A DNA stretch of 63,871 nt, counting the filler, from Octopus bimaculoides (lineage: Eukaryota): NCBI RefSeq assembly GCF_001194135.2. It is 7 parts of 7 records of this genome, joined end to end, with 100 filler letters (N's around TTAATTAATTAA, not from the genome) between each part and the next. Parts side by side here need not be neighbours in the genome. Positions count along the whole stretch, not along the records: positions 1 to 21,832 come from NC_068992.1; 6 more parts are not named here. One strand, given 5' to 3'. How positions within the stretch are numbered: position 1 is the first letter of the stretch; each line of letters starts with the position of its first letter. The notes beneath the pieces were generated by a model. It saw only the letters and a list, made by a program, of their open reading frames with translations, made no database searches and was not told the DNA's origin. The translations under genes were made by a program, and so were the position numbers. Below are positions 203 to 20,569 of this stretch, piece by piece.

Positions 203-233
<31 letters not shown>

Positions 234-358: not shown

Positions 359-478
359 CTAATGCTAAGGAACCAGCTATTCCATATACTTCATATGGCA
401 GTACCCTGAACATAATGACAGTTACTACAGCAGATAAACAAATAGATTCAGAGGAAAATACACCAGCATCAGTTCTTG
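359..478 (+). CDS. 120-nt phase 1-1 linker exon of PLAT-repeat membrane-protein gene: (A)NAKEPAIPYTSYGSTLNIMTVTTADKQIDSEENTPASVL(G)
   Basis: Poly-T/CCCAG acceptor, GTATGT donor at 479, only this frame is open; same-length paralogous exon with the same splice sites at 20138-20257. Confidence 0.8.
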
Positions 479-639
479 GTATGTATTTCTTTGATTTACA
501 ATGTCTATGGAATGCTAGTTCCCCCTTCTATAAACCTCTTGATCCATCTCTCCACATTGTTCATATTTATCTGTCTGTCCTTATATTGGTCAGGAGTTGT
601 TTAGCTCAATCTTCTTCTGATATTATATTTTTCCCCCTG

Positions 640-780
640 CACTACCAAGCACTGCACTATCAACTCACAAATGCACTACAGCCTGCATATATAGGACACG
701 AAGGCACTACAATCCCAGAGTCACAGGCAGTAAAAGACTTGGGGATCAGTATGTTCAACAATGCATTATTTTATATTCTG
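640..780 (+). mobile_element. CR1/L2-like LINE reverse transcriptase C-terminal fragment
   Basis: Translation contains TTIPESQAVKDLGI, resembling the VKDLGV thumb motif of CR1/L2 RTs. Confidence 0.5.
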
Positions 781-1228
781 CATCGCCCACCAGATAAGGG
801 ATCGAGGGACCCTATCAAAGGCTTTCTTCAAGTCCACAAAAGCCAAATATAGGGGTTTATCTTTGGCAAGGTATTACTCTTGCAGTTGCCATACCAGGAA
901 TATAGCATCAGTGGTGCTTCTACCTGGCACAAAACCGAACTGCATCTCATCTAAGCAGACTCTCTCCCTAATTAGTTGGGCTATGACCCTCTCCGTAACC
1001 TTCATCACCTGATCCAGCAGTTTGATACCTCTGTAGTTATTTCTATCTAAAGCATCACCTTTACCGTTGTAGCAGTTGACTATGGTGCTGCTACGCCAGT
1101 CATTGGGTATGACTCCATCATGAACTACCTGGTTTACAATACGGGTGACTAGGCCATAACCCACACCACCAGATGTTTTAAGCACCTCAGCAGTGATTCT
1201 TGATGGGCTGCAGGCTTTTCCTGTATAT
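780..1228 (-). mobile_element. RTE-clade LINE reverse transcriptase fragment
   Basis: ORF 874-1254: IPNDWRSSTIVNCYNGKGDALDRNNYRGIKLLDQVMK...QFGFVPGRSTTDAIF; clearly homologous to the RTE at 54184-54760. Confidence 0.92.
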
Positions 1229-1229
1229 A

Positions 1230-1525
1230 TTTTTGTGAAATTAAATGGTGGCAAGATATTTTCTAAATTGGATCTCTCTGACGCGTGCCTACAGATTAGA
1301 GTAGACGATGAATGCTCTAATTTAACAGTGTTTTGTCGACATTTTCAAGATTTTGAAAAAGGCATATAATGAAACAATAACGATTTTGCACTCCAACAAA
1401 TGTACCGAGTGTACCGAGTAACATCTAACCTGAATACACAGTCAGGAATGTTAGCTGCACAATTGATGTTTGCTAGAAAGGTCAGATCTGTTTTTGATAA
1501 GTTGATACCGAGTGAAAATACAAAA
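1230..1525 (+). mobile_element. Ty3/Gypsy pol remnant (RT piece joined to integrase C-terminal piece)
   Basis: FVKLNGGKIFSKLDLSDACLQIRVDDECS (RT motif), then YRVTSNLNTQSGMLAAQLMFARKVRSVFDKLIP (integrase C-terminus). Confidence 0.8.
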
Positions 1526-1750
1526 AAGGTGTGTGTGTGTGTCTTTGTGTTTGTGTCTGTCCCACCACCACTACCCGACCACCAGTATTGGTTTGTTCAC
1601 GTTCCTGTAATGTAGCAGTTTGGCAAAAGAGATTGATACATTAAGTACCAGGCTTCAAACCATAAGTACCGCAGCCGATTCGTTCGATTAAAATCCTTCG
1701 AGGCGGTGCCCCAGCATGGCCGTAGTTCAATGACTGAAAGAAGTAAAAAA
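1526..1750 (+). mobile_element. SINE family B, 3' half
   Basis: (TG)n-GTCCC...GGTGCCCCAGCATGGCC...ACTGAAAGAAGTAAAA; same family as 26180-26515; shared with the duplicated block at 18480-18715. Confidence 0.7.
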
Positions 1751-1823
1751 ATGTATACAAACAGTATTATTACAAACAGTCAATCTATGTAATTAAACAT
1801 TATCTCATGGTGCTTTGTTTCAG

Positions 1824-2080
1824 GTTACTGCTGGAGAATCACATTTTACATTTCAAGCAATTATTTTTCTGGAACCTCAAATTATTTCACTGTTCAATTA
1901 ATCAATGATGAAACACGTGTTTTCTCAAAGAAATTATCTTGTGCAAAAAAATGTAAAAGGGGATCTCAACCAAGCTTTGATTTTTGCACCCCACAAATTG
2001 ATCCAGTAAAAGAATTAAAATTAAATGAAACGGTAAAAAATTTCTTCAAAAAATTCACATCTGGTTGGAGATTGGAAAGC
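1824..2080 (+). CDS. PLAT/LH2-like domain exon A, phase 1-0: (G)YCWRITFYISSNYFSGTSNYFTVQLINDETRVFSKKLSCAKKCKRGSQPSFDFCTPQIDPVKELKLNETVKNFFKKFTSGWRLES
   Basis: TTTGTTTCAG acceptor, GTAAGT donor at 2081, 257-nt open frame. Motifs GT-x-Y-x-x-V-Q-L, RG-x-x-x-SF and W-x-LES follow the PLAT consensus order. Paralogue at 18791. Confidence 0.8.
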
Positions 2081-2689
2081 GTAAGTATTTGGATAGAATT
2101 CTCATTTTTAATCCGTATGTGTGGGTGTGTATGTATGTGTGTGTGTGGATGTGCTTGTGTGTGTGTGTGCATGATATGTGTGTATGCATGTGTGTGATTT
2201 TGCAGCATTATCATGTTACTTAAAAGTTCCTATTTTCGATTCAGGTAATAACATATCAGTATTGAGCTCTTTGGCTACTTTCTCACACTACTTTCAATTC
2301 AGGCATTGAAACAGGTACATAAATACAAGGATATGAAAATATCTCCTTTTAATATGGAATGCAATCATCTCTCTCTCCTTCCCATTCTTTCTCTCTCTCT
2401 CTCACAAAGTAATAGACATACATACACATACAAACACATGCATACATATACATACATACATACATGCATACATACGTATGCATAGATCACTACACCTTGC
2501 TCTGGTATCAGCTGCTACAGTGAATGCAATTGAAAGGCTGACCACTGCATGGTCCACACAGTTATCAATGATAGCTACTAAAGCAACACCTGTTGTTACA
2601 AACAGAGTTAAGCTATCAACAAACATATTCCAGGGTAATAGCTTTTTTTTTTATCTGTAATATTGTTTGTATTGGCAGTGTATCCCTTG

Positions 2690-3350
2690 TCGGCCCTGTT
2701 AACCAAATGCCAAGGCTACACCAGATATAGGAATCGAGTTTAAGCTAGATAAATGCTTATATGTGATAGTCACTTGAGGAAAGATTATTGTCCTGACAGA
2801 GAACATGAATACCAACGGCTTGCCTATCTCCCCAATTTCTAACGATGAAATCTACAAGTACCTCGGAATCGATGAGAATGTAGCATACGTTGGTGCTGTG
2901 ACTAAAGCCAGTAAAACAGCAATAAGAGCAACACTGATAGGATACATGTGAGATGGCGGTAGAGGCATAAGGTCAGTCCAAACAACCTTTGGAATTCGCA
3001 TTGTATCACTCAGATAACACTAGCTGAACAGTAAAGAAAGAAACGAGTACATTCCATGCATACTCAAAAGGAAGAGCAACAACATTATCATAGTTGGAGA
3101 ACTACTGAGTAGGTGTTCTGAGAATCCAGCAGTCTTATGCAAACCAATGGAGGCTGGACTGGCCAACTTAAATAGAAGCTTGAAGGAGAAGCAGGCAGCA
3201 TACCAGCAAAAAGCAATGCATGGGTACATATCCCATAAGCTAGAGAGCAACAACAGTATTGACAGGAAAAGCAGACTCTCCTGGGCCCACAATAGATACA
3301 ATAGGCCCCACCTAGAAGGATTTACCTTCACTGTTCAGAAAATAAGATAG
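2690..3350 (+). mobile_element. R4/Dong-clade non-LTR retrotransposon fragment, decayed
   Basis: DIGIEFKLDKC...GK...YKYLGIDE, GGRGI and MHG...ID...W...LEG motifs, interrupted by stop codons. Confidence 0.75.
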
Positions 3351-3447
3351 CTAAATTCCTTTAACCTGGGCAATGCTGGTTATTTCTGCTAGTATATATG
3401 TATATATATATCATCATCAGTGTCCATGCATGAGTAGGACAATATAC

Positions 3448-3489
<42 letters not shown>

Positions 3490-3546
3490 TTGTTGGGTGT
3501 GTGTTACATGCAACATGGTTTACATTTTTATTTCAATTCTTTGCAG

Positions 3547-3640
3547 ATTAATCTGATGAACTTGAATACTTCAGCTACCTATAGCTGCACATTCAGTAAC
3601 CCTGGTGCTGATGAAAAAGGCTGTAAGCTAAATCCCAAAG
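3547..3640 (+). CDS. PLAT/LH2-like domain exon B, phase 0-1: INLMNLNTSATYSCTFSNPGADEKGCKLNPK(G)
   Basis: TTCTTTGCAG acceptor, GTAAAT donor at 3641, 94 nt. Phase matches the donor at 2081 and completes W-x-LES-I-x-L-x-x-x-x-T-x-x-x-Y. Confidence 0.75.
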
Positions 3641-3694
3641 GTAAATTATATCATATGTCTATGTAGTTAGCAAGCAATATATATATGTATGTAT

Positions 3695-3925
3695 GTCATC
3701 ATCATCGTCATCATCGTGGGTGCTTTTAGGTGCCACTGGCACGAGGGCCAGTCAGGCAGTACTGGCAACGGCCACGTTCAAAATGGTGTATTTTACATGT
3801 CACCTGCACAGGAGCCAGTCCAGCGGCACTGGCAACGATCTCGCTCGAATGCCTTTACACATGCCACCGGCACAAGTGCCAGGGAGGCGACGTTGGCAAC
3901 GATGCATAAATGCGCTATCATAGAA
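3695..3925 (-). mobile_element. SINE-like retroposon piece, same family as 24-202 and 12030-12240
   Basis: GTGGGTGCTTTTA(G/C)GTGCCA...GGCAACG core, closely similar to 12030-12240; (CAT)n at the left end. Confidence 0.65.
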
Positions 3926-4894
3926 AGATTCAAGTAAAAGAACAGAAAAGTTAGACGCGGAGGAATAGAGATAGACACAACAAAGAATATATAGTAAAAT
4001 CATTAAGGGATGTTTAGAATAAACGAAGATAAGATAGAAGATAATTAATGAATGAAACTGTTCTTATATGTTACCCTTTGAATGTTAAAAAGTTAGCTGT
4101 ACAGGATCTTGTTAATCTCTGTCACAGATTTTTAAAAATACTTTACCTTTATTTTCTAATTGATTAATAATTTTAATTAATTTAATTAATTTAGTAAATT
4201 AACCATACTTAATTTTATATCTGTATGTGTGTGTGTGTACATGTGTATATATATATATGTTTATATATGAAATACCTAATGATTTCACTTCTCTACTCCC
4301 ATAATTTAATAACCTGTCTATTGTTTTTTTTTTATATATAACCATTTATTGTATTTTTGCAAGGGTATGTATGCATTAACATTATCGTTGTTGAAATTAA
4401 TTGATGACAATAATTATTTTTATAACTGTATATATTTTTATATTATATATTAATTGTATTGGTACACTGTATTTTCTTGATGGCTTATTTAATGTTCTCG
4501 TTATATTTTCCATATGTTATATATAAATCTCTTTGTATATTCTTCCCTGATGAGATTTTGGCTTATAATAATTAACGAAACTGATTTACTTAAATTAAAT
4601 TTGATTGACTTTATGCTATAAGTGATGAATTGAAACAATTATTCCTATTGTCCATATTCATCCATCTGTCCATATATTTTTTTATTTTTTATTCTTTCAG
4701 TGATCGCTATGTGAATTGTGTCATATGGACAGAAATGTGAATTGTGCCATCTCTGTCAACAACCTGTAGCCTTCTCAGCCTGCAGCTCCACTTTTTCAAG
4801 AACTCAGTAACAATACACTATTTCTTTTTGAATCCTATTATTTGTTTACAACCAAGAAGAATAATCCTTTCTATTATAGAAACAATACCTGAAA

Positions 4895-5075
4895 TTTTAA
4901 GGGAGTGGGTCTAGTCGATTAGATTGATCCCAATGCACAGCTGGTACTTATTTCATCAACCAAAAAAGACAAAGTCAACTCATGCAACATTTAAACTCAG
5001 AACATAAGATGGACAAAATGCTGCTAAGTATTTTGTCCAGTCAGCTAAAAATTCTTCCAGATTGCTGCCTTAGTG
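4895..5075 (-). mobile_element. SINE family A, diverged
   Basis: GTCGAT...CCC...CTGGTACTTATTT...AACTCAGAAC...GCTAAG pattern shared with the copies at 7432-8062. Confidence 0.65.
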
Positions 5076-6104
5076 AAGACGAATAATACAAGGAAGAAGC
5101 GTTACTATAGAAGTGTCATTGTGTCAACATATGCAATTTGAATGACCTATGTCAGTTACTTAAAAAGTTATGCCAACTTTCGCTTTATTTTAGTTACAGT
5201 CCTTATAATATGCTATATACACTATTCATAAATCCTTTTGGAATGTATTTCCCAAATGTACTTTTCTTTGATTTAACTTTTACATACATGGGTTGGTCAT
5301 TATAACCAGATTTATATAATAATATACTGTTTTGAATCGCACTACATTTGGTTTATCCAAACAGAACGTTTGCTAGTTTAAAAATTTACTCGCAAAACTG
5401 TTTCTTTAAATTAGTTCTAACTTAAAATCTGGACATTTATATGACACCAATTATCTCTCATATTCTACCATCCTGCTTGCTACCCAAATAGATAAAGATC
5501 CATAAGATAGAACTCCTTTAGCTCAAGCTTCTTTGGTTATTATATTTTCCTTATTTTATTTTTTCACTGATCCTACTATTCCCATTTCGTTGTTTCCCTT
5601 TCTTCCCTTCTTCTCTTTTGTTATGTATACTTCTACATTTGAGTTATAACTTCCTTTGATGACCTTAAATGTGACACACAGACAAAAACAGACAGGAACA
5701 AGCAGAGTAATATTATAATATTCATTGTTAGAGCTTTAACACTGGTTTTCATATTTGTGACAATGTTAAATTGAACTGTTGTTTCTAGCAAAAGTCTCTG
5801 TCTCGTTCACACTCACGCTTTAAATTCACTTCAGAATCAAAACAATAAACATTGAGCTGTAATTTCTAACCAAAAAAACCTGCCTTCTTTATCATATATC
5901 GCTAGAGAATTTTCTTCAGCGAGGGATTTTTAGACATTTTGTGTCACTAATACTTTTTAGTTAGAAATTCACCTCCTGTAAACCAGTACTTCCCAACCTT
6001 TTTTTCACTTTTGTTACATTTATATTCTTTTCACAATTCAAAATAAAAAAATAATCACTATAAGTGTGACTTTGTTTTTTTTTTCTGTGAATTTATCAGA
6101 ACCA

Positions 6105-6189
6105 ATGGCGGCTAGCTGGTTTGCAAGTATATTTTTGTCGCATTTTGCCCTGTGTTTGCAGTGTCTTCAAATTTTAAATCTTATATACA
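6105..6189 (+). CDS. Candidate first coding (signal-peptide-like) exon MAASWFASIFLSHFALCLQCLQILNLIY, phase 1 end
   Basis: Polypyrimidine tract + CAG at 6097-6099, then ATG at 6105 and a hydrophobic 28-aa stretch. Only a moderate GTGACC donor at 6190. Phase fits the acceptor at 6720. Confidence 0.3.
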
Positions 6190-6269
6190 GTGACCTTGAT
6201 TCTTGAATTAGGGTATAAAATTTCTCCAATAATTATAACATACATTTGTACCATATTGATATATAGAGA

Positions 6270-6515
6270 GTGGAAGTGTGTAGCTTCATGGTAGAGTGTT
6301 GCACTCGTGATCATGAGATTCTGATTTCAATTCCTGGACCAGGTGATGTGTTATGTTCTTAATCAAAGCACTTCATTTCACATTGCTGCACTCCTCTCAG
6401 CTGGTAAAAATGAGTAATCCTGCAACAGACCAATGTCCCACCCAGGGAAGGAACAGACATGTTCCAGAATCCAGGAAACTGGCATTGTGAACCTGTGGCT
6501 TGGAAAAACTTTTTC
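6270..6515 (+). mobile_element. tRNA-derived SINE family D
   Basis: A/B-box-like head (TGGTAGAGTGTTG...GATTTCAATTCC) and GCACTTCATTTCACATTGCTGCA core; inverted relative at 36100-36375. Confidence 0.65.
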
Positions 6516-6719
6516 ATCTTTTTATTTTGGGGCAGGGGTGGGATTGGAGGATATAGTGGATGCAATATTTAGCATGCTCCAGGCCATTGGAACATTTTGA
6601 ACTTGTCCCTTATGTTTCAAACATAATGTGGGAGAGAGGTGATGGTGGTTCTATGTTCCATCAATAAATTTGAAAGAGTATATGTGTTGTTTGAATCTGC
6701 TCTTAAATGTCTATTGCAG

Positions 6720-7021
6720 ACAAGAAAGCAAGAGGCTTAANNNNNNNNNNNNNNNNNNNNNNNNNNNNNNNNNNNNNNNNNNNNNNNNNNNNNNNNNNNN
6801 NNNNNNNNNNNNNNNNNNNNNNNNNNNNNNNNNNNNNNNNNNNNNNNNNNNNNNNNNNNNNNNNNNNNNNNNNNNNNNNNNNNNNNNNNNNNNNNNNNNN
6901 NNNNNNNNNNNNNNNNNNNNNNNNNNNNNNNNNNNNNNNNNNNNNNNNNNNNNNNNNNNNNNNNNNNNNNNNNNNNNNNNCCTGAGAAATACTGTCTTCC
7001 ATACAACCATAGAATTACTGG
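6720..7021 (+). CDS. Exon or exons spanning an N-gap: (D)KKARGL...LRNTVFHTTIELL(G)
   Basis: TTGCAG acceptor just before the gap and a GTGAGT phase-1 donor at 7022 just after it; the interior is unsequenced. Confidence 0.45.
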
Positions 7022-7134
7022 GTGAGTATACCTTAACAAGACCTGGATGAAACTGCTCTGCTTACCCAAAAGGTTATGCATGAATATGAGTTTTAAGAAT
7101 GATGTTAATATTAACATTAACAATTGGGTGGCAA

Positions 7135-8062
7135 GTTGGCAGAATTGATAGCACAGCAGACAAAATGGTTAGCAGCATTTCAATCATATTTATGTTCTGA
7201 ATTCAAATTCTACCCAGGTCAACTTTGCCTTCCTTCCTTTTTGGGTTGATAAAATAAGTACCAGTTGAACACTGGGGTCGATGAAGTTGACTTGTTTTAT
7301 TGACTTGTTTTATGGCTAACATCATCATAATAGTTCCATTGTTTTTAGTGGCAACAGACAATCTCTGAATAAATGAAAATATCAAACAAATATTGTACAG
7401 GAACATCTGTAGGAAGATTTGNNNNNNNNNNGATTGGATCGACCCCAGTACGCAACTAGTACTTATTTTATTGAACCCGAAAGGATGAAAGGCAAAGTTA
7501 ACCTCAGCAGAATTTGAACTCAGAACATAAAGACAGATAAAATACTGCTAAGCCTTTCACCTGGTGTGTTAATATTTCTTGTTTCTTTATTGCCCACAAG
7601 GGGCTAAACTTGGAGGGGACAAACAAGGACAGACAAAGGGATTAAGTCGATTACATCGATTCCAGTGCGTAGCTGGTACTTATTTTATCGATCTCGAAAG
7701 GATGAAAGGGAAAGTCGACCTCGGCGGAATTTGAACTCAGAACGTAACGGCAGACGAAATACCACTAAGCAATTCACCCGGCGCGGTAATGTTTCTGCCA
7801 GCTTGCTGTCTTAAATAAATAAAATATTTATTTCATTATTGCCTGCTGGGGACTAAACATAGATGGGACAAACAAAGACAAACAAAGGGATTAAGTCAAT
7901 TACATTGACCCCAGTGCAAAACTGGTACTTATTTAATTGACCCCGAAAGATGAAAGGCAAAGTTGACCTCGGTGGAATTTGAATTTAGAATGTAAAGACA
8001 GACGAAATAAAGTTAAGCGTTTCGCCCAGCATGCTAACGTTTCTGCCAGCTAGCCGCCTTAA
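7135..8062. mobile_element. Cluster of four family-A SINEs: one on + (7135-7295) and three head-to-tail on - (about 7432-7575, 7580-7810, 7835-8062)
   Basis: Repeated GGCGAAAT...TTCTGAGTTCAAATT...TTTCATCCTTTCGGGGTC...AAGTACCAG consensus. Confidence 0.85.
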
Positions 8063-8772
8063 TAAATAAAATGTTAAACAAGTAAGTATTGTACAGGAAC
8101 ATCTTTGGGAGATTTGTAAATCATAGATAGAAAAAAAACAAAGAATGCTAAGGATTGGTTTTGAAGTGAAGTTTTAAAGAACTTCCTGCTCTCAGTTACT
8201 ATTCAAGTGAATTATTTACGCATGCATACACACATATGCCCATTTTTATGGCACACACATATGTATGTATGTATGTATATATATATACCTATATTTATAA
8301 ATAATTATCTACATAACGTACACAAACGCATGCACACAAGTATTTAAAGTCACACCAATACACTAAAATTATACACAGAAAGGAACATAGAATCTTATTG
8401 ACAAAATATATTAAATCTCACTTTAGACACAAACCCCAAAATATAAGAAGTCACTGTATAGCTTATACATATTGATTCTACACTCTTCATTGGAATTAGT
8501 TTATCAAACCAACGAAAGAACTAACAAACAAACTGATCCCAACAAGATTTGGAATCAGAATATAAAGGATCAAAATTATAAAAAAAAAAAACAACGTTTA
8601 GCTTGACGCTGCATTGATTCGGAGTCGTTGCTGCACTTGTGGAAATTATATTTTTAATTAACCAGTAAGTTGTGGCTCCTTATTTCCTCCATTTATTTCT
8701 TTTTATCGTTTATTTTTTGCTTGTTTTGTCCATTGAAATATAGAACATGCTGTGGCACAACCTTAAAGGGTT

Positions 8773-9116
8773 CAGGAGTTCTCAACCATTTTTTATCTAC
8801 AGACCCCTTTCATAACTATTTTATTCTAGTTGACCCCCATCTCATTACTATTCAATGTTCAAAAACTAGTTTTATAGAAACTTCTTTTAAAATTCCTATT
8901 TTGTTTTTCACACATTAACTTGAGTAGGTTGAACCATATAAAATGTTAAAGAAAAAACACCCAGCTGTTTCTTGCAATACATACAGATAAAGCAAAATTT
9001 TTTCAGGGGCCCTTAAACTGCTATTGGGGATCCCCAATTTTCTATTTTGTTTCTTGGGCCCCTAAAATATTATATGGACCCTAAAGGGCCATATAGACTT
9101 CGGTTGAGAACCACTG
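8773..9116. mobile_element. Non-autonomous hAT-like MITE inserted into a family-B SINE
   Basis: Terminal inverted repeats CAGGAGTTCTCAACC / GGTTGAGAACCACTG; SINE sequence resumes on both sides. No clean 8-bp TSD seen. Confidence 0.7.
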
Positions 9117-10220: not shown

Positions 10221-10329
10221 CATACACATTAGTATACATACATACAAACATGATGTAAAACCACCACATGTTTTCGCAGCTAGCGACATACCAACAGATT
10301 CATAGTTCCTGCCAGCCATACTACATTAC

Positions 10330-11170
10330 TGGCTGAAGTAACTGGAAGAGAATCTGGATCAAGGAGAAGGTGTTTAACCAAGATGCTCTCTGGCTGGAAG
10401 AAATCCGAAGAAGTTACTGCTCCTGCGTTACATCCAAGACATACAACATTGATGGTGAAACTCTTGCAACTGCAATCCAGAAACTCTAGGATGGAAAAGC
10501 ACCGGGAAGAGATTTCATTGTTGGATATTGGTACAAGAAGCTAACCTTCTACCGATCATATCTTATCAATTTGTACCAGCAAGATCTCAATGGGAACAGT
10601 AGCATACCACACTGGTTAGCTCTGGCAGAGACAAAATTGATCCCCAAATACAGAACCATCCACACGGCAAAAAATTACTGGCCAAGTGCATGCCAGAACT
10701 TAATGTATAAGATACACACAGCATGCTTAAACCTTTTCCTCCAGGACCATTGTGAAACCAATAACATCATCACAGTAGAACAAGCAGCTGGGAAAAATGG
10801 AGTCTGCAGATTGCTGAGCAATTTGTTAATCAACAGAACTGTGATGTCAGGGGTGCGAGAGCATAGGAGGAACCTAGTTTAAATGTGGCTAGACTACAAA
10901 AACAACTTTGACTCTGTTCCCTACTCAAGGAAGCTAGGAGCCCTTCAACTTGCTAAAGTTCCCGTGAGCATAGTCAATGCCATAGCTGACCTGACTTCAT
11001 CGTGGGCCACCATCTTGAAATTAAACAAAGAGTGACTGCATTATCACTGATAGAATACAGTATTGCAAAGGTATTTTCCAAGGGGACAACCTCTCTGTGA
11101 TGTTGTTTACACTTTCTGTAAACCCCTTGTCATTCATGTTAAGGAAGTTTGAAGGATATTTCACTGGTTC
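10330..11170 (+). mobile_element. R4/Dong-clade LINE reverse transcriptase remnant
   Basis: GKAPG..IVGYWYKKL, PHWL..AETKLIPK, EQAAGK..LLIN, WLDYKNNFDSVP and GIFQGDNLS.MLF.LSVNPLS motifs, with stops and frameshifts. Confidence 0.85.
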
Positions 11171-12029
11171 CATCCTTACTGGTTTCATTTTTTTTTTTGC
11201 ACTTTGAAAGAGCCGCTATTTAAATGTTTTTGTTTTTTATTCTTCAAAGGACAACAATTTTTGATTTGTATTCTTTACCAACACAATGTTTCCATTAATG
11301 ACTACAAGAGCAGGTGTGGCTGTGTGGTAAGAAGTCTGCTTTCCAACCACATTGTTCTGGGTTCAGTCTCATTGCATGAAACCTTGGACAAGTGTCTTCT
11401 GCTTTACTTTGGTTGACTAAAGCTATGTGTGTGAATTTAGTATGTCATTCCGACATACATAGTATATTATTATACTAACAATTGCAAGCTGCACTTGAAA
11501 TTGAATATAAAAAGTATAATACACAATAGAATTCATAGATAATAATAAAACTGTAGTTACATTCATGTAAAACAAATGTCATGTTTATGAAAACAATGAA
11601 CAAAACTCAACTTAATTGCAATATGATTCATACTTATTAAAATGAAGGACACAGTAAAGTACATTATAACTTTAGTCACATGAAACTGTTATATTGTATT
11701 TCTCATTAAAAAGAATATTACAGTATTAAATAATTATACTAGATCCTTCAAAATGGAGGGGACAATTATTGAATGACTACAATATTCAATAATCATACTA
11801 GTTCCTTTGAAACTATTCATTTCCATACATTTCAGAGAAATTGGTCATCTGAAAAAGTGTCCTTTTCAAAAATATAAAAAGATCTATATTTGATGATATA
11901 GCGATAGAAAGATTAAAATTTTAAAGTTTTCTGAAAGGGAACAAAATTCTAAAACTATGTGAAACATTGCCACTATTCATAATACTATGTTTGATCAACT
12001 ATTGCTGATTTAATTTGTAACTTTCTGCT

Positions 12030-12240
12030 GAGTGTGGGTGCTTTTACGTGCCACCGGCACAAAGGCCAGTCAGGCGGTACTGGCAACGGCCACGCTCAAA
12101 ATGGTGTATTTTACGTGCCACCCGCATGAGAGCCAGTCCAGGGGCACTGGCAATGATCTTGCTCAAAAGTCCTTACACATACCACAGGCACAAGTGCCAG
12201 AAAGGCGACACTGGGCACAGGTGCCATCACGATTTCGCTT
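12030..12240 (-). mobile_element. SINE-like retroposon piece, paralogue of 3715-3925
   Basis: ORFs at 12032 and 3693 translate almost identically. Confidence 0.65.
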
Positions 12241-12389
12241 TAAATTTTAACCCATTTTCCAAGAGTTTAATTTCTTCTTTAGATAATATTTGTAATGGGA
12301 AATTTTGAGTAACTGTTCTGACTTTCAATAAAAAGTGATATATTTTCTCTATTTTTAAAAAGTCATTCAAATATTTTGTTTACTTTCAG

Positions 12390-12438
12390 ATTATGAATTG
12401 CATTTTCATTTTACTTTGTCTCCTGCAAATAGTTTACA
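12390..12438 (+). CDS. Candidate 49-nt exon, phase 1-2: (D)YELHFHFTLSPANSL
   Basis: TTACTTTCAG acceptor, GTAAGT donor at 12439, open frame with beta-strand-like alternation. A phase-2 partner exon was not found and may lie in gap 14276-15000. Confidence 0.4.
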
Positions 12439-13046
12439 GTAAGTATTCTAACTTGTAACTTCCTTCATGAATTCTTGAAACAATAATTTTCATCTCATCA
12501 AAACATAGACAACGATTCATTTCAGTTTTATATAATGTTACAATATAATATTTCAGCTGCATTATCATGATTGTGTGTGTATGTGTGTTTTTGTGTGCAC
12601 GCGCGTGTGTGTGTTTGATTGTGTGCGCGTGTATATTTATATATATCATCATCATTATCATTGTCATTTAACATTTGCCTTCCATCTTAGCATGGGTTGG
12701 ACAGTTTAATAGGAGCTCACCAGGCAAGCGACTCCACTATATGTTTGTGTCTATTTTGGCATAGATTTTGGGTTGGACACCCTTCCTAACACCAACCACC
12801 TCACAGAGTAAGCTGAGTGCTTCTTATGTGGCACCAGCATACAAGAGGTCAGTTCGTGGCATGGTTTTTACAACTGGATGCTCTTTCAAATGCTGACCAC
12901 TTTACAGTGTGGACTGGATGCTTTTTAAGTGGCACCAGCACTGGCAGGGTCACCAAGTAACTTGCAAAACAAGGAATCTTTGAGAGGGAAGGGGACATTG
13001 GAGGAGGTGAGCATGTGTTAGATGATGAGAGGTTAGAGTGTGTGTA

Positions 13047-14094: not shown

Positions 14095-15903
14095 TATATC
14101 TTTTACTTTTTATCTTTTTTCTTTTACTTGTTTCAGTCATTGGAGTGTGACCATGCTGGGGCACTTCCGTGAAAGATTTTAGTTGAACAAATCAAACTAA
14201 GCACTTGTTATTTTTCTAAGATGGAAACTAAAAGAAGCCTGTCATATATATACATACATATATATATATATATANNNNNNNNNNNNNNNNNNNNNNNNNN
14301 NNNNNNNNNNNNNNNNNNNNNNNNNNNNNNNNNNNNNNNNNNNNNNNNNNNNNNNNNNNNNNNNNNNNNNNNNNNNNNNNNNNNNNNNNNNNNNNNNNNN
14401 NNNNNNNNNNNNNNNNNNNNNNNNNNNNNNNNNNNNNNNNNNNNNNNNNNNNNNNNNNNNNNNNNNNNNNNNNNNNNNNNNNNNNNNNNNNNNNNNNNNN
14501 NNNNNNNNNNNNNNNNNNNNNNNNNNNNNNNNNNNNNNNNNNNNNNNNNNNNNNNNNNNNNNNNNNNNNNNNNNNNNNNNNNNNNNNNNNNNNNNNNNNN
14601 NNNNNNNNNNNNNNNNNNNNNNNNNNNNNNNNNNNNNNNNNNNNNNNNNNNNNNNNNNNNNNNNNNNNNNNNNNNNNNNNNNNNNNNNNNNNNNNNNNNN
14701 NNNNNNNNNNNNNNNNNNNNNNNNNNNNNNNNNNNNNNNNNNNNNNNNNNNNNNNNNNNNNNNNNNNNNNNNNNNNNNNNNNNNNNNNNNNNNNNNNNNN
14801 NNNNNNNNNNNNNNNNNNNNNNNNNNNNNNNNNNNNNNNNNNNNNNNNNNNNNNNNNNNNNNNNNNNNNNNNNNNNNNNNNNNNNNNNNNNNNNNNNNNN
14901 NNNNNNNNNNNNNNNNNNNNNNNNNNNNNNNNNNNNNNNNNNNNNNNNNNNNNNNNNNNNNNNNNNNNNNNNNNNNNNNNNNNNNNNNNNNNNNNNNNNN
15001 ACGATATTTCGTCTGTCTTTAAGTTCTGAGTTCAAATGTAAAGAAGACAAAAGACAAAGACATGTGAGGGAACAATAAGTAGATGTATTAATTTGATGCT
15101 CAGGTTGAGTGGATAAGTCTCTGATGCTTTGAGCTTTGCTCTTTAATGGAAAGAGGAAAAACAATGGAGAGAGACGGAAAAAATTTAGAGAGAAATGAAA
15201 TGTGTTAGAATTAACGGTTTAACATGATGAAATGACTAGAAAAAAAAAAAAGAGGCTGAGTGGAGGGGAGATAATAACGGTGACCTGGTTGAACACATAC
15301 ACCTGTGTGTATGTAAGAATGATATGTGTGAGTATCTATGTGTGAATGGGAGCAAGTGCATGTGAATGTATGTTTGTGTGAGCTTAAAATTATATGAGCT
15401 TGTGTGTGTATGTGTATGTGTGTTTGTGTAGACGTGTGTATATGTGTGAGAGTGTGAGAGGCTGTGCAAAGCATACATATGTGTGTGTGTGTGTGTCTGT
15501 TTGTCCCCACCACCACTTGATAACACATGTTGGTTTGTTTATGTCCCCATACCTTACCAATTCAGCAAAAAAGAACTTATAAAATAAGTAATAGGCTTAA
15601 AATGAAAAACTAAATATCGGACTTCATTCCTTTGACCAAAATTCTCCAAAGAATTGCCCCAGCATGGCTGCAGTTTAAAGACTGAAACAAGTAACATATG
15701 AAAAATAAAGATTCTGTTTAAATATCTGGATCAATAGCCTAATACTACAGTTAATAACAACCATTGACATGAAAGATACAACTAATATTCAGAAAATCTT
15801 TGAACTTTGAACCTCAGCAGTCTTTCAAATAATATAAATTTTCCATCAAATGAATTTAAGTTTTTTGTCCAATTTCTGACACTAATTATCAATAATTCTC
15901 TAG

Positions 15904-15975
15904 GCAATGAGGATCAGAATAAACATTCCAAGAGTGCAAAAGATCTACAAATACAGAACAATCGAATGCCAAAAG
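15904..15975 (+). CDS. 72-nt phase 1-1 linker exon: (G)NEDQNKHSKSAKDLQIQNNRMPK(G)
   Basis: CTGAC/CTAAT branch-like motifs, TTCTCTAG acceptor, GTATGT donor at 15976, open frame; phase fits PLAT exon 18791. Confidence 0.65.
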
Positions 15976-16827
15976 GTATGTATTAGAATAATATATGCTT
16001 TAAGCATATTTGCAGTGTGCTGCCAAATCGGATATCGTTTATTTCTATAATCTTGTACTATCATCTGCTTCAATCTTAGCAAAATATTAATAAACATATG
16101 GAGATATCAAATTCGGGAAATTACAATTCCTTACATTCCCATTGTTTTCCCCAAATTGCAGTTACTATCTATTGGCTACAAATCCTGGCAGATGTGTCAC
16201 TATTTTTCCCTGAAGAGGTAGAATTTGGGTTCGAAATGCACAGTGCTAGAACATATACATGAAGGCAGCCTATCCAATTCTCAAACAATTCTGCCAGTTC
16301 CCTAATCTTGACTAGTAATTTTCTTTTATCAACCTCAAGCAAATGAAAAGCAAAGTTGGTCTCAATGAACAGAATAGCCAAAAGTCAAAAGTTAAGTGGT
16401 AGTATTACGTACATTCTAAAAATGTCTCTGTTATCTACTTCAGTCTTTTGAAAAGCATCCCACCTCTCTCTCTCTCTCTCTCCATTTTTCCATACATACT
16501 TGAAATTGCTATCTGTCCACCCCTGTTGTTCTTCTCACTCCAGAGCCCACCCTGACACCTTGTTACCACTGTCTTTATCTCTTTTCCAAGATCCACCCTC
16601 ATTACTTCCACCCACTCTTGTATGATCCTTTCTACCATAGGCACAAAGCCTGACATTTTAGGGGATGGAGCAAATCTATTACATCAGCCCCCAATACTTA
16701 ACTGGTACTTATTTCATTGACCCTTGAAGGGTGAAAAGTAAAGTCTGCTTCTGCCAAATTTGAACTCAGAACATAAAAACAACCAAAAGGCCACTAAGCA
16801 TTTTGTCCTGCATGCAAACGATTATGC

Positions 16828-17272
16828 AGGCTTTCACCGATTTTTCAACACCCTGATCCATATTTGGCGTGTAAACATAAGCTCCTCATCAGTGCTTTCA
16901 TTTTCGTGATTCCTGGAGATCCCATGTGGAATTCTTTTAGCATACGATTTTACAAAGAAACAGGTATTACAACCCGCTGAGTGTGCATAAGTATGTCATC
17001 ACATATCGAATACCATTTCGAAATTGTTACACTCAGCTACAGGAGTTTTTGCATTTGTTCCTGACTTTTACTATTTTTTTCATTTTTATTAAGAACACAT
17101 CCTTCTCTGCTTTAACTTTTATTTCCTCTGAAGTGATGGGCAGTTTGTGTACTATGTTGCAGAGTAGGTATTTTATTTCGATTTCAGCTTTTAATGCCAC
17201 TATTACTCTGTCCTCTAACTGTTCATTGTATTTAAGTATCAATCTTGACAGCCCATCCGCATGTCCCAAGTA
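16828..17272 (-). mobile_element. Ty3/Gypsy pol remnant (RNase H end to integrase zinc-binding region)
   Basis: GHADGLSRLI...EDRVIVAL...LPITSEEIK, then RVVIP..LKEFHMGSPGITKMKALMRS, with a stop and a frameshift. Confidence 0.85.
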
Positions 17273-18790
17273 GGTATACCCAAGAGAGCACACATGTACA
17301 CACACATACACACACACACATATACACAAGGTAACTTGTACACATGCATTAATGAGCTGACGCCATCAGGTCAAGTGCATATGCGCGCGCACACACACAG
17401 ACGCACACATACATACTCACCACATGCACACATCCACGCACTCATACAGCAGGTATGCCCTTCCCCCCACACACACTGGTATTTGGTTTCGTTTAAGATT
17501 CTTGCACATAACACCCATCCAAATGCCACAAACATCCTGTCCAACACGTGGTCCAAGAAGTACATTTTCTACTTGGTGTATTCGATGTCGCTGATTATTC
17601 CATCCTTATGCAACAAAACTATGTGACCCATATTGACCAATAACAGCCGAATCTCCAGTAGTCATGCTGAATTTCCTCCACCACTCCGTTCGGATGCCTA
17701 AACCTGAAAAGCTAGGTTCGTGTGAAGCGCCTACGAAACTTTAAGTTGCATTGAGCTGAATTAAACTGTTATTAGATACTAATATATGTACTCCTAGGAA
17801 ATGTGTTGAGTAATTCTTTCTTACTTTTGTCCATTCAGTCGTACAAATATGTATGCGGTGGTGGTGTAATCTGCATAGTATACATACATACAGGGTTAAT
17901 TTATCCATAAATTGGAGATTGAAAAAGAATGACAAACTGCTTTAATCCATTTTTGAAACTTATTGGGTTCTTGTCAGAAGTGTCTACATCCTAGAGAAAT
18001 GAGTAGACAATCTGTTTTTATACACAACAGATCCAGTAGCTTCAAGGAACTGGAGCTATTTATTTGCAAGCTATAAGTATTTAACACTTTATTTGACACC
18101 AATAGACTGTCAACGGAGATTCGTACAAATATACGATGAGCTATTTTCAGGTTCTATCTATCAAATCCACTCACAATGCTTTCATTAGTCTGAGGTTATA
18201 ATAGAAGAAACTTGCTCAAGGTGCTGTGAATGGGATGGAACGCAAGCCCACATGGTTTGGAAGTAAGCTTCACCACTACAGAGTCACACCTGTACCTCAA
18301 AAATATTTATTAAGTAGTTATAAATATAGACGCAAACGTTGTTATGTAGTAGGAAGTTTACTTCCCCAGCACACACATGGTTCTGAGTTCAATCCTACTG
18401 CTTGACACCTAGGGCAAATGTCGTTTACTATAGCCCCAGGCCAACCAAAGCTTTGTGAGTAGATTTAACGAAGAAGCCCATCCTATATGTATATGTGTGT
18501 ATGTTTGTGTGTGTGTGTCTTTGCATTTGTGTTTGCCCCACCACCACTACTCGACCACCAGTATTGATTTGTTCATGTTCTTGTAACATAGCGGTTTGGC
18601 AAATGAGATCAATGCAATAAGCACCAGGCTTTAAACAACCGATTTGTTCAACTAAAATCCTTCGAGGCGGTGCCCCAGCATGGCCGTAGTTCAATGACTG
18701 AAAGAAGTAAAAGATAAAATGTATACAAACAGTATTATTACAAACAGTCAATCTATGCAATAAACATTATCTCATTGTGCTTTGTTTCAG

Positions 18791-18875
18791 GTTACTGCTG
18801 GAGAATCAAATTCTATATTCCAAGGAAACTTTTGTCTGGAACCTCAAACTATATCACTGTTCAATTAATCAATGA
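18791..18875 (+). CDS. PLAT/LH2-like exon A, second copy, truncated by N-gap: (G)YCWRIKFYIPRKLLSGTSNYITVQLIN
   Basis: 74/85 nt identical to 1824-1908, with the same acceptor and a near-identical upstream intron. Confidence 0.8.
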
Positions 18876-20137
18876 NNNNNNNNNNNNNNNNNNNNNNNNN
18901 NNNNNNNNNNNNNNNNNNNNNNNNNNNNNNNNNNNNNNNNNNNNNNNNNNNNNNNNNNNNNNNNNNNNNNNNNNNNNNNNNNNNNNNNNNNNNNNNNNNN
19001 NNNNNNNNNNNNNNNNNNNNNNNNNNNNNNNNNNNNNNNNNNNNNNNNNNNNNNNNNNNNNNNNNNNNNNNNNNNNNNNNNNNNNNNNNNNNNNNNNNNN
19101 NNNNNNNNNNNNNNNNNNNNNNNNNNNNNNNNNNNNNNNNNNNNNNNNNNNNNNNNNNNNNNNNNNNNNNNNNNNNNNNNNNNNNNNNNNNNNNNNNNNN
19201 NNNNNNNNNNNNNNNNNNNNNNNNNNNNNNNNNNNNNNNNNNNNNNNNNNNNNNNNNNNNNNNNNNNNNNNNNNNNNNNNNNNNNNNNNNNNNNNNNNNN
19301 NNNNNNNNNNNNNNNNNNNNNNNNNNNNNNNNNNNNNNNNNNNNNNNNNNNNNNNNNNNNNNNNNNNNNNNNNNNNNNNNNNNNNNNNNNNNNNNNNNNN
19401 NNNNNNNNNNNNNNNNNNNNNNNNNNNNNNNNNNNNNNNNNNNNNNNNNNNNNNNNNNNNNNNNNNNNNNNNNNNNNNNNNNNNNNNNNNNNNNNNNNNN
19501 NNNNNNNNNNNNNNNNNNNNNNNNNNNNNNNNNNNNNNNNNNNNNNNNNNNNNNNNNNNNNNNNNNNNNNNNNNNNNNNNNNNNNNNNNNNNNNNNNNNN
19601 NNNNNNNNNNNNNNNNNNNNNNNNNNNNNNNNNNNNNNNNNNNNNNNNNNNNNNNNNNNNNNNNNNNNNNNNNNNNNNNNNNNNNNNNNNNNNNNNNNNN
19701 NNNNNNNNNNNNNNNNNCCTCCGAAAACCTTCCATACCTTGCCACGATTCAGAATACCGAAAGGATCTTCACCTCTTACATCACACCTTTCTTCCTACTT
19801 TAACGCCGAGGTGGTATAATTTCCTGGGAGAGAAATAATTTTGCGGCTGAGGATAGCTTTATATTGTAAATTATACACATATAAAGCTTGAAACACGTGT
19901 ACCGCGGAATCCTTTGTAGTTTTGTTGTTATTTTTGGATTTACAATTTATTCTTTCACCGCAACCACTAGCTAGCATACACAGGTGCTTACAATTGTCAA
20001 GTATTACCTCTAAATTTTAATTTACCTATATATATATATATATATATGCATGTATGTATATGTATCTATATATGTGTGTGTATATATATTTAGTAAAAGG
20101 CAAAAGATTTATATGCTTAACTTTTTTTAATACCCAG

Positions 20138-20257
20138 AACATGTTAAGAAGCCAAATATTCCATATAATCCAAATAGCAGTACCTCGAACATAATAACAA
20201 TTACTACAGAAAATGACCAAATAGATTCAGGGGAAAATACATCAGCATTAGTTCTTG
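20138..20257 (+). CDS. 120-nt phase 1-1 linker exon, second copy: HVKKPNIPYNPNSSTSNIITITTENDQIDSGENTSALVL(G)
   Basis: CCCAG acceptor, GTGTGT donor; colinear with 359-478 with no indels (97/120 nt identical); flanking introns also homologous. Confidence 0.8.
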
Positions 20258-20514: not shown

Positions 20515-20555
<41 letters not shown>

Positions 20556-20569
20556 GCATTTGATGGTGT

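What the first reader, a model, noticed from the sequence alone, without database searches (positions are those of the whole stretch)
359..20257. Duplicated 120-nt exons differ at 17 of 39 full codons and every change alters the amino acid
SEEN: a hand alignment of 359-478 against 20138-20257 gives 23 nt differences and no indels: 11 at codon position 1, 8 at position 2, 4 at position 3. No codon differs silently only. The other two frames contain stops, so the frame is not mis-assigned. INFERENCE: this fits diversifying selection on an exposed S/T/N-rich stalk, as in recognition or immune-type receptors. The sample is small (40 codons), and gene conversion or chance cannot be excluded.
Basis: partly seen in the sequence, partly recalled or inferred. 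Interest (0 to 1): 0.75.

Follow-up and report, generated by a model that had tools for sequence, protein, structure and literature searches.

The report
Fast-diverging linker exons of octopus paralogues
The two 120-base exons are real coding exons, but they belong to two neighbouring duplicated octopus genes of an uncharacterised membrane-protein family, and their all-amino-acid-changing differences hint at positive selection without proving it.

Summary
359-478 and 20138-20257 differ at 23 of 120 bases with no indels, and 17 of 39 codons differ, all changing the amino acid.

The window is Octopus bimaculoides chromosome CM046612.1. Exon A is a cassette exon of LOC106876762: isoform X1 includes it and X2 skips it. 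It links the second and third PLAT/LH2-like domains of a protein with no membrane anchor. Exon B is the membrane-proximal stalk exon of the next tandem paralogue, whose order is signal-peptide exon, PLAT exon, B, C, TM exon. So these are paralogous exons of two gene units, not two exons of one stalk. No Ig or other immune-type domain was found.

Four independent DNA copies were available (A, B and two from O. vulgaris). A one-ratio codon model gives omega about 3.3, with LRT p 0.004-0.03 and a parametric bootstrap p of 0.018. Codon positions 1+2 evolve 1.6 times faster than the flanking introns (p 0.03).

The signal is weak in three ways:
- It was picked post hoc and rests on 39 codons.
- It partly reflects a low dS, which is expected for a cassette exon.
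- It is not significant on the branches outside the discovery pair (omega 2.3-2.5, p 0.16-0.19).

Verdict: a real, fast-evolving linker module. Positive selection is suggestive only.

The parts
307..358 (+). Conserved 3' end of the intron before exon A: branch-point-like CTTGAC, T-run and CAG acceptor
   Evidence: 4/51 differences from copy B. The motif tttaatRcccag is kept in all 5 DNA copies.
359..478 (+). Exon A: a 120-nt phase 1-1 cassette exon of LOC106876762. It encodes (A)NAKEPAIPYTSYGSTLNIMTVTTADKQIDSEENTPASVL, the linker between the 2nd and 3rd PLAT-like domains.
   Evidence: The exact peptide is in XP_014780935.1 (isoform X1, P0009) and A0A0L8GJ50 (P0007). It is absent from isoform X2 (P0006). 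tblastn places it at L004 18445-18567, which is window 358-480.
479..634 (+). Duplicated intron flank downstream of exon A, with donor G|gtatgt
   Evidence: 27/156 differences from copy B. It aligns in 4 copies. Homology to the other copies stops at about 634.
1824..2080 (+). PLAT-like domain c, exon 1, of LOC106876762 (…YCWRITFYISSNYFSGTSNY…GWRLES)
   Evidence: tblastn with P0009 and P0003; exon limits.
3547..3640 (+). PLAT-like domain c, exon 2 (INLMNLNTSATYSCTFSNPGADEKGCKLNPK), ending in phase 1
4643..4764 (+). Remnant of a third copy (A') of the linker-exon unit. Only the downstream flank survives and the exon itself is missing. It contains the terminal mini-exon 4701-4714 (TG ATC GCT ATG TGA, giving …K-VIAM-stop) of LOC106876762.
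   Evidence: Sequence comparison with copy B, L003 and L001. The CDS of P0009 ends at L004 22801, which is window 4714. Sequence read.
4686..6039 (+). Intron orthologous to the intron that directly follows the stalk exon in O. vulgaris and O. sinensis
   Evidence: 87.7-87.8% identity to L003 26843-28178 and L001 5212-6547
12393..12438 (+). Signal-peptide exon (MNCIFILLCLLQIVY) of the second gene unit
   Evidence: tblastn with P0003 and P0009. Sequence and splice sites. The surrounding 269 nt (12239-12507) are 98.1% identical to the region around the gene-1 signal exon.
15904..15975 (+). Exon 2 of the second gene unit (S-NEDQNKHSKSAKDLQIQNNRMPK), phase 1-1
   Evidence: Read. It is similar to residues 17-39 of P0009.
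18791..18875 (+). Start of PLAT-like exon 1 of the second gene unit (YCWRIKFYIPRKLLSGTSNYITVQLIN…), cut off by assembly gap 18876-19717
   Evidence: 89.7% identity to the domain-b region of gene 1
20086..20137 (+). Conserved acceptor flank of exon B
20138..20257 (+). Exon B: 120 nt, phase 1-1, encoding HVKKPNIPYNPNSSTSNIITITTENDQIDSGENTSALVL. It is the membrane-proximal stalk exon of the second gene unit.
   Evidence: Homologous to the annotated stalk exons of O. vulgaris CAI9731029 and CAI9731026. It is collinear with L003. Its phase fits exon C and the TM exon (sequence).
20258..20467 (+). Duplicated intron flank downstream of exon B
20925..20987 (+). Exon C (inferred): 63 nt, phase 1-1, encoding (D)TAHTSASAHKKLNKKAQRKI, a second short stalk exon
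   Evidence: AG/GT sites and frame read. The region is homologous to L002 75401-75522 and 85346-85500, which hold the annotated mini-exons of P0003. No counterpart was found in L001 or L003.
21424..21445 (+). Short alternative first exon (ATG AAT TCA AAT AAT ATT AAA G), as used by the O. sinensis model XP LOC118765596
   Evidence: P0001 begins MNSNNIK and continues into the TM exon. The same bases occur in the window and in L001.
21554..21620 (+). Transmembrane exon ((V)ILCSVLIPTIVLLCMLCIIVT-R)
   Evidence: All 22 residues of the exon are identical to P0001 and P0002. The surrounding DNA is 94.8-95.4% identical to L001 and L003.

Best explanation
The two sequences are paralogous copies of one exon module. 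The module is a symmetrical (phase 1-1) 120-nt exon encoding a Cys-free, acidic, Ser/Thr-rich spacer of about 40 residues. It belongs to an Octopus-only tandem gene family with this architecture: signal peptide, one to three PLAT/LH2-like beta-sandwich domains, spacer exon(s), a TM helix and a tyrosine-rich tail.

Every ectodomain module (PLAT pair, spacer, exon C) is phase 1-1. Segmental duplication therefore copied whole modules in frame.
- Copy A ended up as an optional inter-domain linker in LOC106876762, a member with no TM that ends in VIAM-stop.
- Copy B is the juxtamembrane stalk of the next gene.
- A third copy lost its exon.

Shown:
- The gene structures, the cassette status of A, the paralogy and the PLAT-like fold.
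- Amino-acid-changing positions in the spacer evolve at least as fast as neighbouring introns.
- A scaffold of residues is kept (consensus xVKEPTIPYTxYxSTxNIMTITTxDEQTDSEENTSASVL).

Inferred:
- The spacer needs only length, composition and a few anchor residues. Most replacements are therefore tolerated or mildly favoured.
- Synonymous sites are somewhat held back by splicing signals of a skippable exon.
- Together these give omega above 1 without requiring strong diversifying selection.
For: Identity and location:
- The window equals L004 minus 18087, i.e. O. bimaculoides CM046612.1.
- Exon A is in X1 and skipped in X2.
- The gene-1 CDS ends at window 4714.
- The window also holds the signal, exon 2, PLAT, B, C and TM exons of a second unit.
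- O. vulgaris CAI9731027 has the same PLAT-linker-PLAT order on a gap-free assembly.

Coding status:
- Five DNA copies keep the acceptor, the donor and the frame.
- The O. sinensis and O. vulgaris copy has two in-frame 6-nt deletions.
- Seven protein copies share 8 invariant columns.

Rates:
- Omega is 3.3, LRT p 0.004-0.033, bootstrap p 0.018.
- dN tree length is 0.58, the flanking-intron tree 0.37 and the dS tree 0.18.
- Positions 1+2 run at 1.61 times the flank rate (p 0.027) and position 3 at 0.67 times (not significant).
- The PLAT exons of the same genes also average omega about 1, with M2a against M1a at p 0.02. Fast ectodomain evolution is thus family-wide, not specific to this exon.

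Fold: the AF2 model has pLDDT 72, and the Foldseek top hits are all PLAT domains of lipoxygenases and lipases, TM 0.6-0.74.
Against: - Omega is nominally above 1 in several tests. Pure tolerance of replacements would give omega no higher than 1.
- The splicing-constraint explanation for the low dS is imported from mammalian data and was not tested here.
- Position 3 is not significantly slower than the introns (p 0.25).
- Gene 2 has no protein model in the databases searched. Inclusion of B in O. bimaculoides mRNA is therefore inferred from the O. vulgaris models only.
Confidence: 0.6

Rival explanations
1. The spacer is under true diversifying (positive) selection. Replacements at exposed positions are favoured, for example because the ectodomain meets variable ligands or pathogens.
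For: - M0 omega is 2.8-4.2, LRT p 0.004-0.033.
- The bootstrap gives P(omega at least as high as observed) = 0.018.
- Codon positions 1+2 run at 1.61 times the intron flank rate, p 0.027.
- All ten pairwise omegas exceed 1 wherever differences exist.
- Hypervariable columns 11, 16 and 24 carry 4-5 different residues among 7 copies.
- The adjacent PLAT exons also show a class with omega about 2.1.
- The family is tandemly duplicated and lineage-restricted.
Against: - The exon was chosen because it lacked silent changes, so there is ascertainment bias.
- Only 39 codons and 4 independent sequences were available.
- Branches outside the discovery pair give omega 2.3-2.5 with p 0.16-0.19.
- The exon-wide rate is not above the introns (1.27 times, p 0.23).
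- Part of the signal is a low dS.
- Gene conversion among tandem paralogues (a 98% tract at the signal exon) and double-hit codons can inflate such tests.
- No functional or domain evidence points to a recognition role.
Confidence: 0.3
2. One or both copies are dead, neutrally drifting pseudo-exons. The open frame and the replacement pattern would then be chance.
For: - The exon-wide substitution rate is similar to the flanking introns.
- A 39-codon frame stays open in about 57% of neutral simulations.
- No O. bimaculoides protein model containing B was found.
Against: - Neutral drift predicts equal rates at all codon positions. Positions 1+2 are 2.36 times faster than position 3 (p 0.016).
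- A silent-free pattern arises in only about 1% of neutral trials.
- All five copies keep the frame and both splice sites, and the indels are in frame.
- A and the O. vulgaris copies are in annotated proteins.
- Eight columns are invariant across seven copies.
Confidence: 0.06
3. A and B are alternative exons of a single gene, either mutually exclusive or tandemly repeated within one stalk.
For: They have the same length, the same phase and conserved flanking introns. The O. vulgaris models CAI9731027 and CAI9731028 run several units together.
Against: - A stop codon lies at 4712-4714, and a new signal-peptide exon at 12393 sits between them.
- A is followed by a complete PLAT domain, not by the TM exon.
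- The O. vulgaris run-together models contain a cytoplasmic tail followed by a second signal peptide. That marks them as chimeras of adjacent genes.
Confidence: 0.03

Closest known systems
Alternatively spliced cassette exons with raised dN/dS and lowered dS (e.g. Plass & Eyras 2006, PMC1543662)
   Same: Exon A is included in isoform X1 and skipped in X2. Its length is a multiple of three and it is phase-symmetrical. Its flanking intron ends are better conserved than the exon (7.8% against 19.2%). dS (0.18) is below the intron rate (0.37) while dN is high.
   Different: The published pattern is statistical and mammalian. Here the comparison is among paralogues, not orthologues. Whether B is alternatively spliced is unknown.
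Mucin-like, Ser/Thr-rich juxtamembrane stalks of single-pass membrane proteins (sub-threshold Pfam matches to TMEM154 and Mid2)
   Same: The spacer has no Cys and is 26-38% Ser+Thr. It is acidic and lies directly before the TM helix in gene 2 and in the O. vulgaris proteins. It shows no predicted secondary structure, though only in a poor model.
   Different: It is a single exon of fixed length with a recognisable conserved motif, not a variable-number tandem repeat. The Pfam scores (15-19 bits) are below the cut-offs (23-30). Glycosylation was not tested.
PLAT/LH2 domain proteins (lipoxygenases, pancreatic and lipoprotein lipases, polycystin-1, LOXHD1)
   Same: The ~117-residue module next to the spacer is predicted as an eight-stranded beta sandwich. 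Its best structural matches are all PLAT domains (TM 0.6-0.74, Foldseek E from 3e-5).
   Different: There is no sequence-level match to Pfam PLAT. The octopus module has conserved cysteines and N-glycosylation sequons, lies behind a signal peptide, and is attached to a TM anchor and tyrosine-rich tail rather than to an enzyme.
Tandemly duplicated, lineage-specific receptor-like gene clusters with fast-evolving ectodomains
   Same: At least three adjacent members occur in O. bimaculoides and four consecutively numbered models (CAI9731026-CAI9731029) lie on one O. vulgaris chromosome. Ectodomain omega is about 1 or higher, while the TM exon is 100% conserved. There are signs of local gene conversion.
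   Different: No ligand, expression pattern or function is known. No Ig, lectin, LRR or other recognised recognition domain is present.

Membership tests
Duplicated exons within one gene (tandem or mutually exclusive exons) | Both exons lie in the same transcription unit with no stop codon or new start between them | tested here: not met
   The LOC106876762 CDS ends at window 4714. A signal-peptide exon of a second unit lies at 12393.
Duplicated exons within one gene (tandem or mutually exclusive exons) | Same length, same phase and homologous flanking introns | tested here: met
   Both are 120 nt and phase 1-1. The flanks are 85% identical.
Cassette (skippable) alternative exon | Annotated isoforms with and without the exon, with the frame preserved on skipping | tested here: met
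   For A, XP_014780935.1 contains it and XP_014780936.1 lacks it. For B this was not testable. Transcript reads were not available.
Exon under positive selection | dN/dS significantly above 1 in a phylogenetic test that is robust to model choice | tested here: inconclusive
   Omega is 3.3, p 0.004-0.033, bootstrap 0.018. The test is post hoc with 4 sequences, and p is 0.16-0.19 on the non-discovery branches.
Exon under positive selection | Replacement rate above a neutral reference other than dS | tested here: inconclusive
   Positions 1+2 run at 1.61 times the flanking introns, p 0.027. The whole exon runs at 1.27 times, p 0.23.
Ig-superfamily or immune-type receptor | An Ig, lectin, LRR or comparable recognition domain in the ectodomain | tested here: not met
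   No Pfam family reaches its threshold. The fold of the repeated module matches PLAT, not Ig, despite UniProt's automatic 'Ig-like domain-containing' label.
PLAT/LH2 domain (for the neighbouring module) | Sequence match to the Pfam PLAT profile | tested here: not met
   PLAT is absent from the hmmscan output even at E <= 1.
PLAT/LH2 domain (for the neighbouring module) | Eight-stranded beta-sandwich fold superposable on solved PLAT domains | tested here: met
   AF2 gives pLDDT 72 and 8 strands. The top 50 Foldseek hits are lipoxygenase and lipase PLAT domains, TMq up to 0.74. The model confidence is moderate.
Mucin-like stalk | High Ser/Thr/Pro content, no Cys, position between the ectodomain and the TM helix | tested here: met
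   S+T is 10-15 of 35-39 residues, Cys is 0 and Pro is 2-6. B is followed by exon C and the TM exon. For A, the position criterion is not met, because it lies between domains.
Mucin-like stalk | Dense O-glycosylation | not testable with these tools
   This needs glycoproteomics or expression of the ectodomain.

The most novel reading that the evidence does not exclude
Octopuses carry a lineage-specific tandem cluster of single-pass receptors. Their ectodomains are built from PLAT-fold modules and acidic Ser/Thr spacers, and their tails carry tyrosine motifs. The whole ectodomain (PLAT modules and spacer alike) would be under diversifying selection. This would be a previously unrecognised recognition-receptor family (immune or chemotactile) built on a fold not otherwise known in that role.
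Probability: 0.2. Interest if true: 0.6.

Novelty: new member of a known kind. Interest (0 to 1): 0.32.

Why it matters
If the raised replacement rate is adaptive, this small orphan family would be a candidate for lineage-specific recognition in cephalopods, whose immune and chemotactile receptor repertoires are poorly known. The PLAT fold would then gain an unexpected extracellular receptor role. If it is not adaptive, the case shows how a short, skippable, disordered linker exon can give dN/dS above 1 without adaptation. The practical gains are these:
- The 'Ig-like' label on the O. bimaculoides proteins is not supported by the predicted fold.
- An apparently unannotated TM-anchored paralogue sits next to LOC106876762.
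- The O. vulgaris models CAI9731027 and CAI9731028 look like chimeras of adjacent genes.

Tried and rejected
- **Word-index protein searches.** Searches with the A, B and O. sinensis peptides found only the TM-exon match. I first read this as 'exons not annotated anywhere'. That was wrong: P0007, P0009 and P0002 contain the exact peptides. Those negative results are unreliable.
- **Insertion reading.** Window 637-4685 first looked like a transposon-type insertion into A's intron. It actually holds the third PLAT domain of gene 1, and 4643-4764 is the remnant of a third spacer unit.
- **Simple orthology of B.** By flanking-intron identity, the O. vulgaris and O. sinensis exon matches the lost third unit A'. 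All four DNA copies are roughly equidistant in a star-like tree.
- **Family and structure libraries.** The Pfam scan found nothing above threshold. The PDB sequence search found nothing. Rfam found nothing. Literature searches for the locus names and for octopus PLAT proteins found nothing relevant.
- **Full-length AF2 model of P0003**. Mean pLDDT is 41.6, so it is uninformative beyond a TM helix and a coil-like stalk.
- **More DNA copies.** P0005, P0006, P0007 and P0008 are not on record, and the P0011 gene range is too long.
- **Exon C counterpart.** None was found in the O. sinensis or O. vulgaris 029 locus, consistent with P0002 splicing the stalk exon straight to the TM exon.
- **Excess of double-hit codons.** About 4.5 codons with two or more changes are expected from 23 changes over 40 codons (my Poisson arithmetic). 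Five are seen (plus the split codon), so there is no excess.

Full report
**1. The observation**

Window 359-478 and 20138-20257 are 120 bases each and differ at 23 positions with no indels. Only the frame beginning at the third base is open in both; the other two frames carry stops. In that frame 17 of 39 full codons differ, and every one changes the amino acid. Differences fall 11/7/3 by codon position, or 11/8/4 when the two bases of the split 5' codon are counted.

How unusual this is depends on the test.
- Nei-Gojobori gives Sd 1.5, Nd 19.5, pS 0.056, pN 0.216 and dN/dS 4.4, but Fisher p = 0.10.
- 23 random substitutions with the observed 15:8 transition:transversion split leave no silent-only codon in about 1% of 100,000 trials. 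They keep the frame open in about 57%.

The duplication is not confined to the exon. 229-634 aligns with 20028-20413 at 79.8%. Flank divergence is 15.0% (31/207) against 19.2% in the exon (p = 0.36).

**2. Assembly gaps**

Neither exon nor its flanks touches a gap. The two copies sit in different contigs of one scaffold (1-6740 and 19718-21038).
- The pieces from 16362 to 21647 are collinear, on the same strand, with the gap-free O. vulgaris chromosome.
- The exon order in between is signal peptide at 12393, exon 2 at 15904 and PLAT exon at 18791. This is the normal order for the family.
- Gap 18876-19717 truncates a PLAT exon and must also hide the second PLAT exon. In O. vulgaris the corresponding introns are about 9 kb each. 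The stated gap length, and hence the A-B distance, is therefore a lower bound.

**3. What the locus is**

- The TM exon at 21554-21620 matched an O. sinensis protein, LOC118765596 (P0001).
- An exhaustive HMMER search with P0001, followed by a family search, found a small Octopus-only family.
- The window is identical to O. bimaculoides GCA_001194135.2 CM046612.1; window position equals L004 position minus 18087.
- Exon A is present, letter for letter, in XP_014780935.1 (LOC106876762 isoform X1) and in UniProt A0A0L8GJ50. It is absent from isoform X2. It is therefore an annotated cassette exon.
- In X1 it lies between the second and third copies of a ~117-residue module. The third copy is encoded at window 1824-2080 and 3547-3640. 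The CDS then ends in a 14-base terminal exon at 4701-4714 (…K-VIAM-stop).
- O. vulgaris CAI9731027 shows the same module-linker-module order on a gap-free assembly.

Downstream, the window holds a second complete unit: a signal-peptide exon (12393-12438), exon 2 (15904-15975), a PLAT exon start (18791-18875, cut by the gap), exon B, a short exon C (20925-20987) and the TM exon.
- The phases are compatible throughout. B ends in phase 1, C is 1-1 and the TM exon starts in phase 1.
- Homologous stalk exons are annotated as coding in O. vulgaris CAI9731029, where the stalk is spliced directly to the TM exon, and in CAI9731026, where the order is stalk, C-like mini-exons, TM.

A and B are thus paralogous exons of two adjacent gene units, not two exons of one stalk.

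A third unit (A') survives only as a flank remnant at 4643-4764, followed by 4686-6039. That second stretch is 87.7% identical to the intron right after the stalk exon in O. vulgaris and O. sinensis. The four DNA copies available (A, B, O. vulgaris 029 which equals O. sinensis, and O. vulgaris 026) are therefore best treated as mutually paralogous. Their distances are nearly star-like.

**4. Are they coding?**

- All five DNA copies keep the acceptor tttaatRcccag, the donor G|gtRtgt and the frame.
- The O. sinensis and O. vulgaris copy has two 6-nt in-frame deletions.
- Seven protein copies give the consensus xVKEPTIPYTxYxSTxNIMTITTxDEQTDSEENTSASVL, with 8 invariant columns and hypervariable columns at 11, 16 and 24.
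- The peptide has no Cys, 26-38% Ser+Thr and net acidic charge.

**5. The neighbouring module**

- Pfam finds nothing above threshold, and PDB sequences give nothing.
- An AF2 model built from six copies (pLDDT 72, pTM 0.68, eight strands) matches PLAT/LH2 domains of lipoxygenases, pancreatic lipase and lipoprotein lipase. TM-scores are 0.6-0.74 and Foldseek E-values start at 3e-5.
- The automatic 'Ig-like' label in UniProt is not supported.
- The tail of P0001 carries several tyrosine motifs and gives sub-threshold matches to TMEM154, SCIMP and Comm. These do not establish family membership.

**6. Selection tests with more copies**

- Pairwise omega is 1.1-6.5. Only one pair reaches p 0.04, uncorrected.
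- A one-ratio codon model that I wrote (GY94-type, 4 taxa) gives omega 2.8-4.2 over three topologies and two frequency models. The LRT against omega = 1 gives p 0.004-0.033. The best topology gives 3.26 with p 0.018, and fixing kappa at 2 or 3 changes little.
- A parametric bootstrap under omega = 1 (742 replicates) gives P(omega at least as high as observed) = 0.018 and a two-sided p of 0.030.
- Tree lengths are dN 0.58 and dS 0.18. The flanking introns have tree length 0.37.
- Relative to the flanks, the whole exon runs at 1.27 times (p 0.23), positions 1+2 at 1.61 times (p 0.027) and position 3 at 0.67 times (p 0.25). Positions 1+2 run at 2.36 times position 3 (p 0.016).
- Splitting the tree gives omega 4.4-6.4 on the A and B terminal branches (p 0.025-0.11) and 2.3-2.5 on the remaining branches (p 0.16-0.19).
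- The PLAT exons of the same genes average omega about 1.0-1.6. M2a fits better than M1a (p 0.02), with 43% of sites at omega about 0 and 57% at about 2.1.

**7. Reading the tests**

The result is not neutral drift. Codon positions differ in rate, and in the direction opposite to purifying selection. It is also more than a peculiarity of this exon, because the whole ectodomain is fast while the TM exon is invariant.

The case for positive selection stays suggestive, for five reasons.
- The exon was picked because it lacked silent changes.
- There are 39 codons and four independent sequences.
- The lineages outside the discovery pair agree in direction but are not significant.
- About half of the omega excess comes from a dS below the intron rate. 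[quoted passage not shown]
- Tandem paralogues exchange sequence: a 269-nt tract at the signal exon is 98% identical while the rest of the genes is 78-90%. Such exchange can inflate codon-model tests.

**8. Verdict**

However, they lie in two genes, no immune-type domain is present, and selection is unproven.

The finding is a new, modestly interesting example of a known kind: a fast-evolving, phase-symmetrical linker exon carried along by tandem gene duplication. The most novel reading still open is a PLAT-fold receptor family under diversifying selection in octopuses.

Noticed in passing
window 12239-12507 vs L004 9847-10115: The signal-peptide exon region of gene 2 is 98.1% identical to that of gene 1. 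The other paralogous stretches of the two genes are 78-90% identical. This looks like a local gene-conversion tract between tandem paralogues.
   Followed up: partly
window 21049-21302 vs L004 1610-1863; L004 3736-4227: The intron before the TM exon is 98.4% identical to a stretch about 37 kb upstream. That stretch is followed by a tail-like exon (61% identical to the P0001 tail). A further tandem family member ('gene 0') therefore lies upstream of LOC106876762.
   Followed up: partly
window 4701-4714 (inside 4643-4764): The terminal VIAM-stop mini-exon of LOC106876762 uses an acceptor inside the leftover intron flank of a spacer unit whose exon has been lost. This turns a TM-type gene layout into a TM-less, presumably secreted, three-PLAT protein.
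   Followed up: partly
L001 12064-12516 and 12479-12973; L003 33706-34152 and 34115-34609: The cytoplasmic-tail exon is tandemly duplicated in O. sinensis and O. vulgaris. The O. sinensis model P0001 uses the second copy, and the O. vulgaris model P0002 uses the first.
   Followed up: no
window 1824-2080 + 3547-3640, and L004/L002/L003 homologues: The PLAT-like domain exons average omega about 1. A site model with a positively selected class fits better (M2a vs M1a, p 0.02; 57% of sites at omega 2.1). There are only five sequences, and gene conversion was not controlled.
   Followed up: partly
proteins P0006, P0007, P0009, P0010 (UniProt A0A0L8GI40, A0A0L8GJ50, A0A0L8GHW4, A0A0L8GHR7): These are labelled 'Ig-like domain-containing protein'. 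The predicted fold of the repeated module matches PLAT/LH2 domains instead, and no Pfam Ig family is hit.
   Followed up: yes
proteins P0005 (CAI9731028) and P0011 (CAI9731027), O. vulgaris: These models run a TM segment and cytoplasmic tail straight into a second signal peptide and more PLAT domains. They look like chimeras of adjacent tandem genes. The P0011 gene range is 153 kb.
   Followed up: no
(tool behaviour): The word-index protein search missed P0007, P0009 and P0002, although they contain the query peptides exactly. Negative results from that search should not be read as absence.
   Followed up: yes
window 4-201 and 12629-12830; L001 1067-1261: These are copies of an interspersed SINE-like element (88% identity between the window and O. 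sinensis copies), flanked by TA/TG microsatellites directly upstream of exon A. Rfam finds no RNA family in the window.
   Followed up: partly
window 874-1254 (-) and 10284-11204 (+): Open frames with reverse-transcriptase-like motifs (e.g. FGFVPGRSTTDAIF, and IFQGDNLSVMLF). These are probably LINE remnants in the introns and the intergenic space.
   Followed up: no
window 7432-8075: An internal direct repeat with a period of roughly 220-250 bp (74-79% identity between copies). Related copies occur at 7141-7293 (inverted), 4861-5072 and 16622-16827.
   Followed up: no
window 20883-20924: Just upstream of exon C, the motif ATACTGATACTAC follows its own AG and resembles the start of exon C (ATACTGCTCATAC). 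It may be a small duplication or an alternative acceptor.
   Followed up: no
P0001 residues about 110-175 (tail exon, outside the window): The cytoplasmic tail carries tyrosine motifs of the YxN and YxxM types (YSNV, YENG, YIDM). It gives sub-threshold matches to SCIMP, TMEM154 and Comm, which hints at an adaptor-like signalling tail.
   Followed up: no
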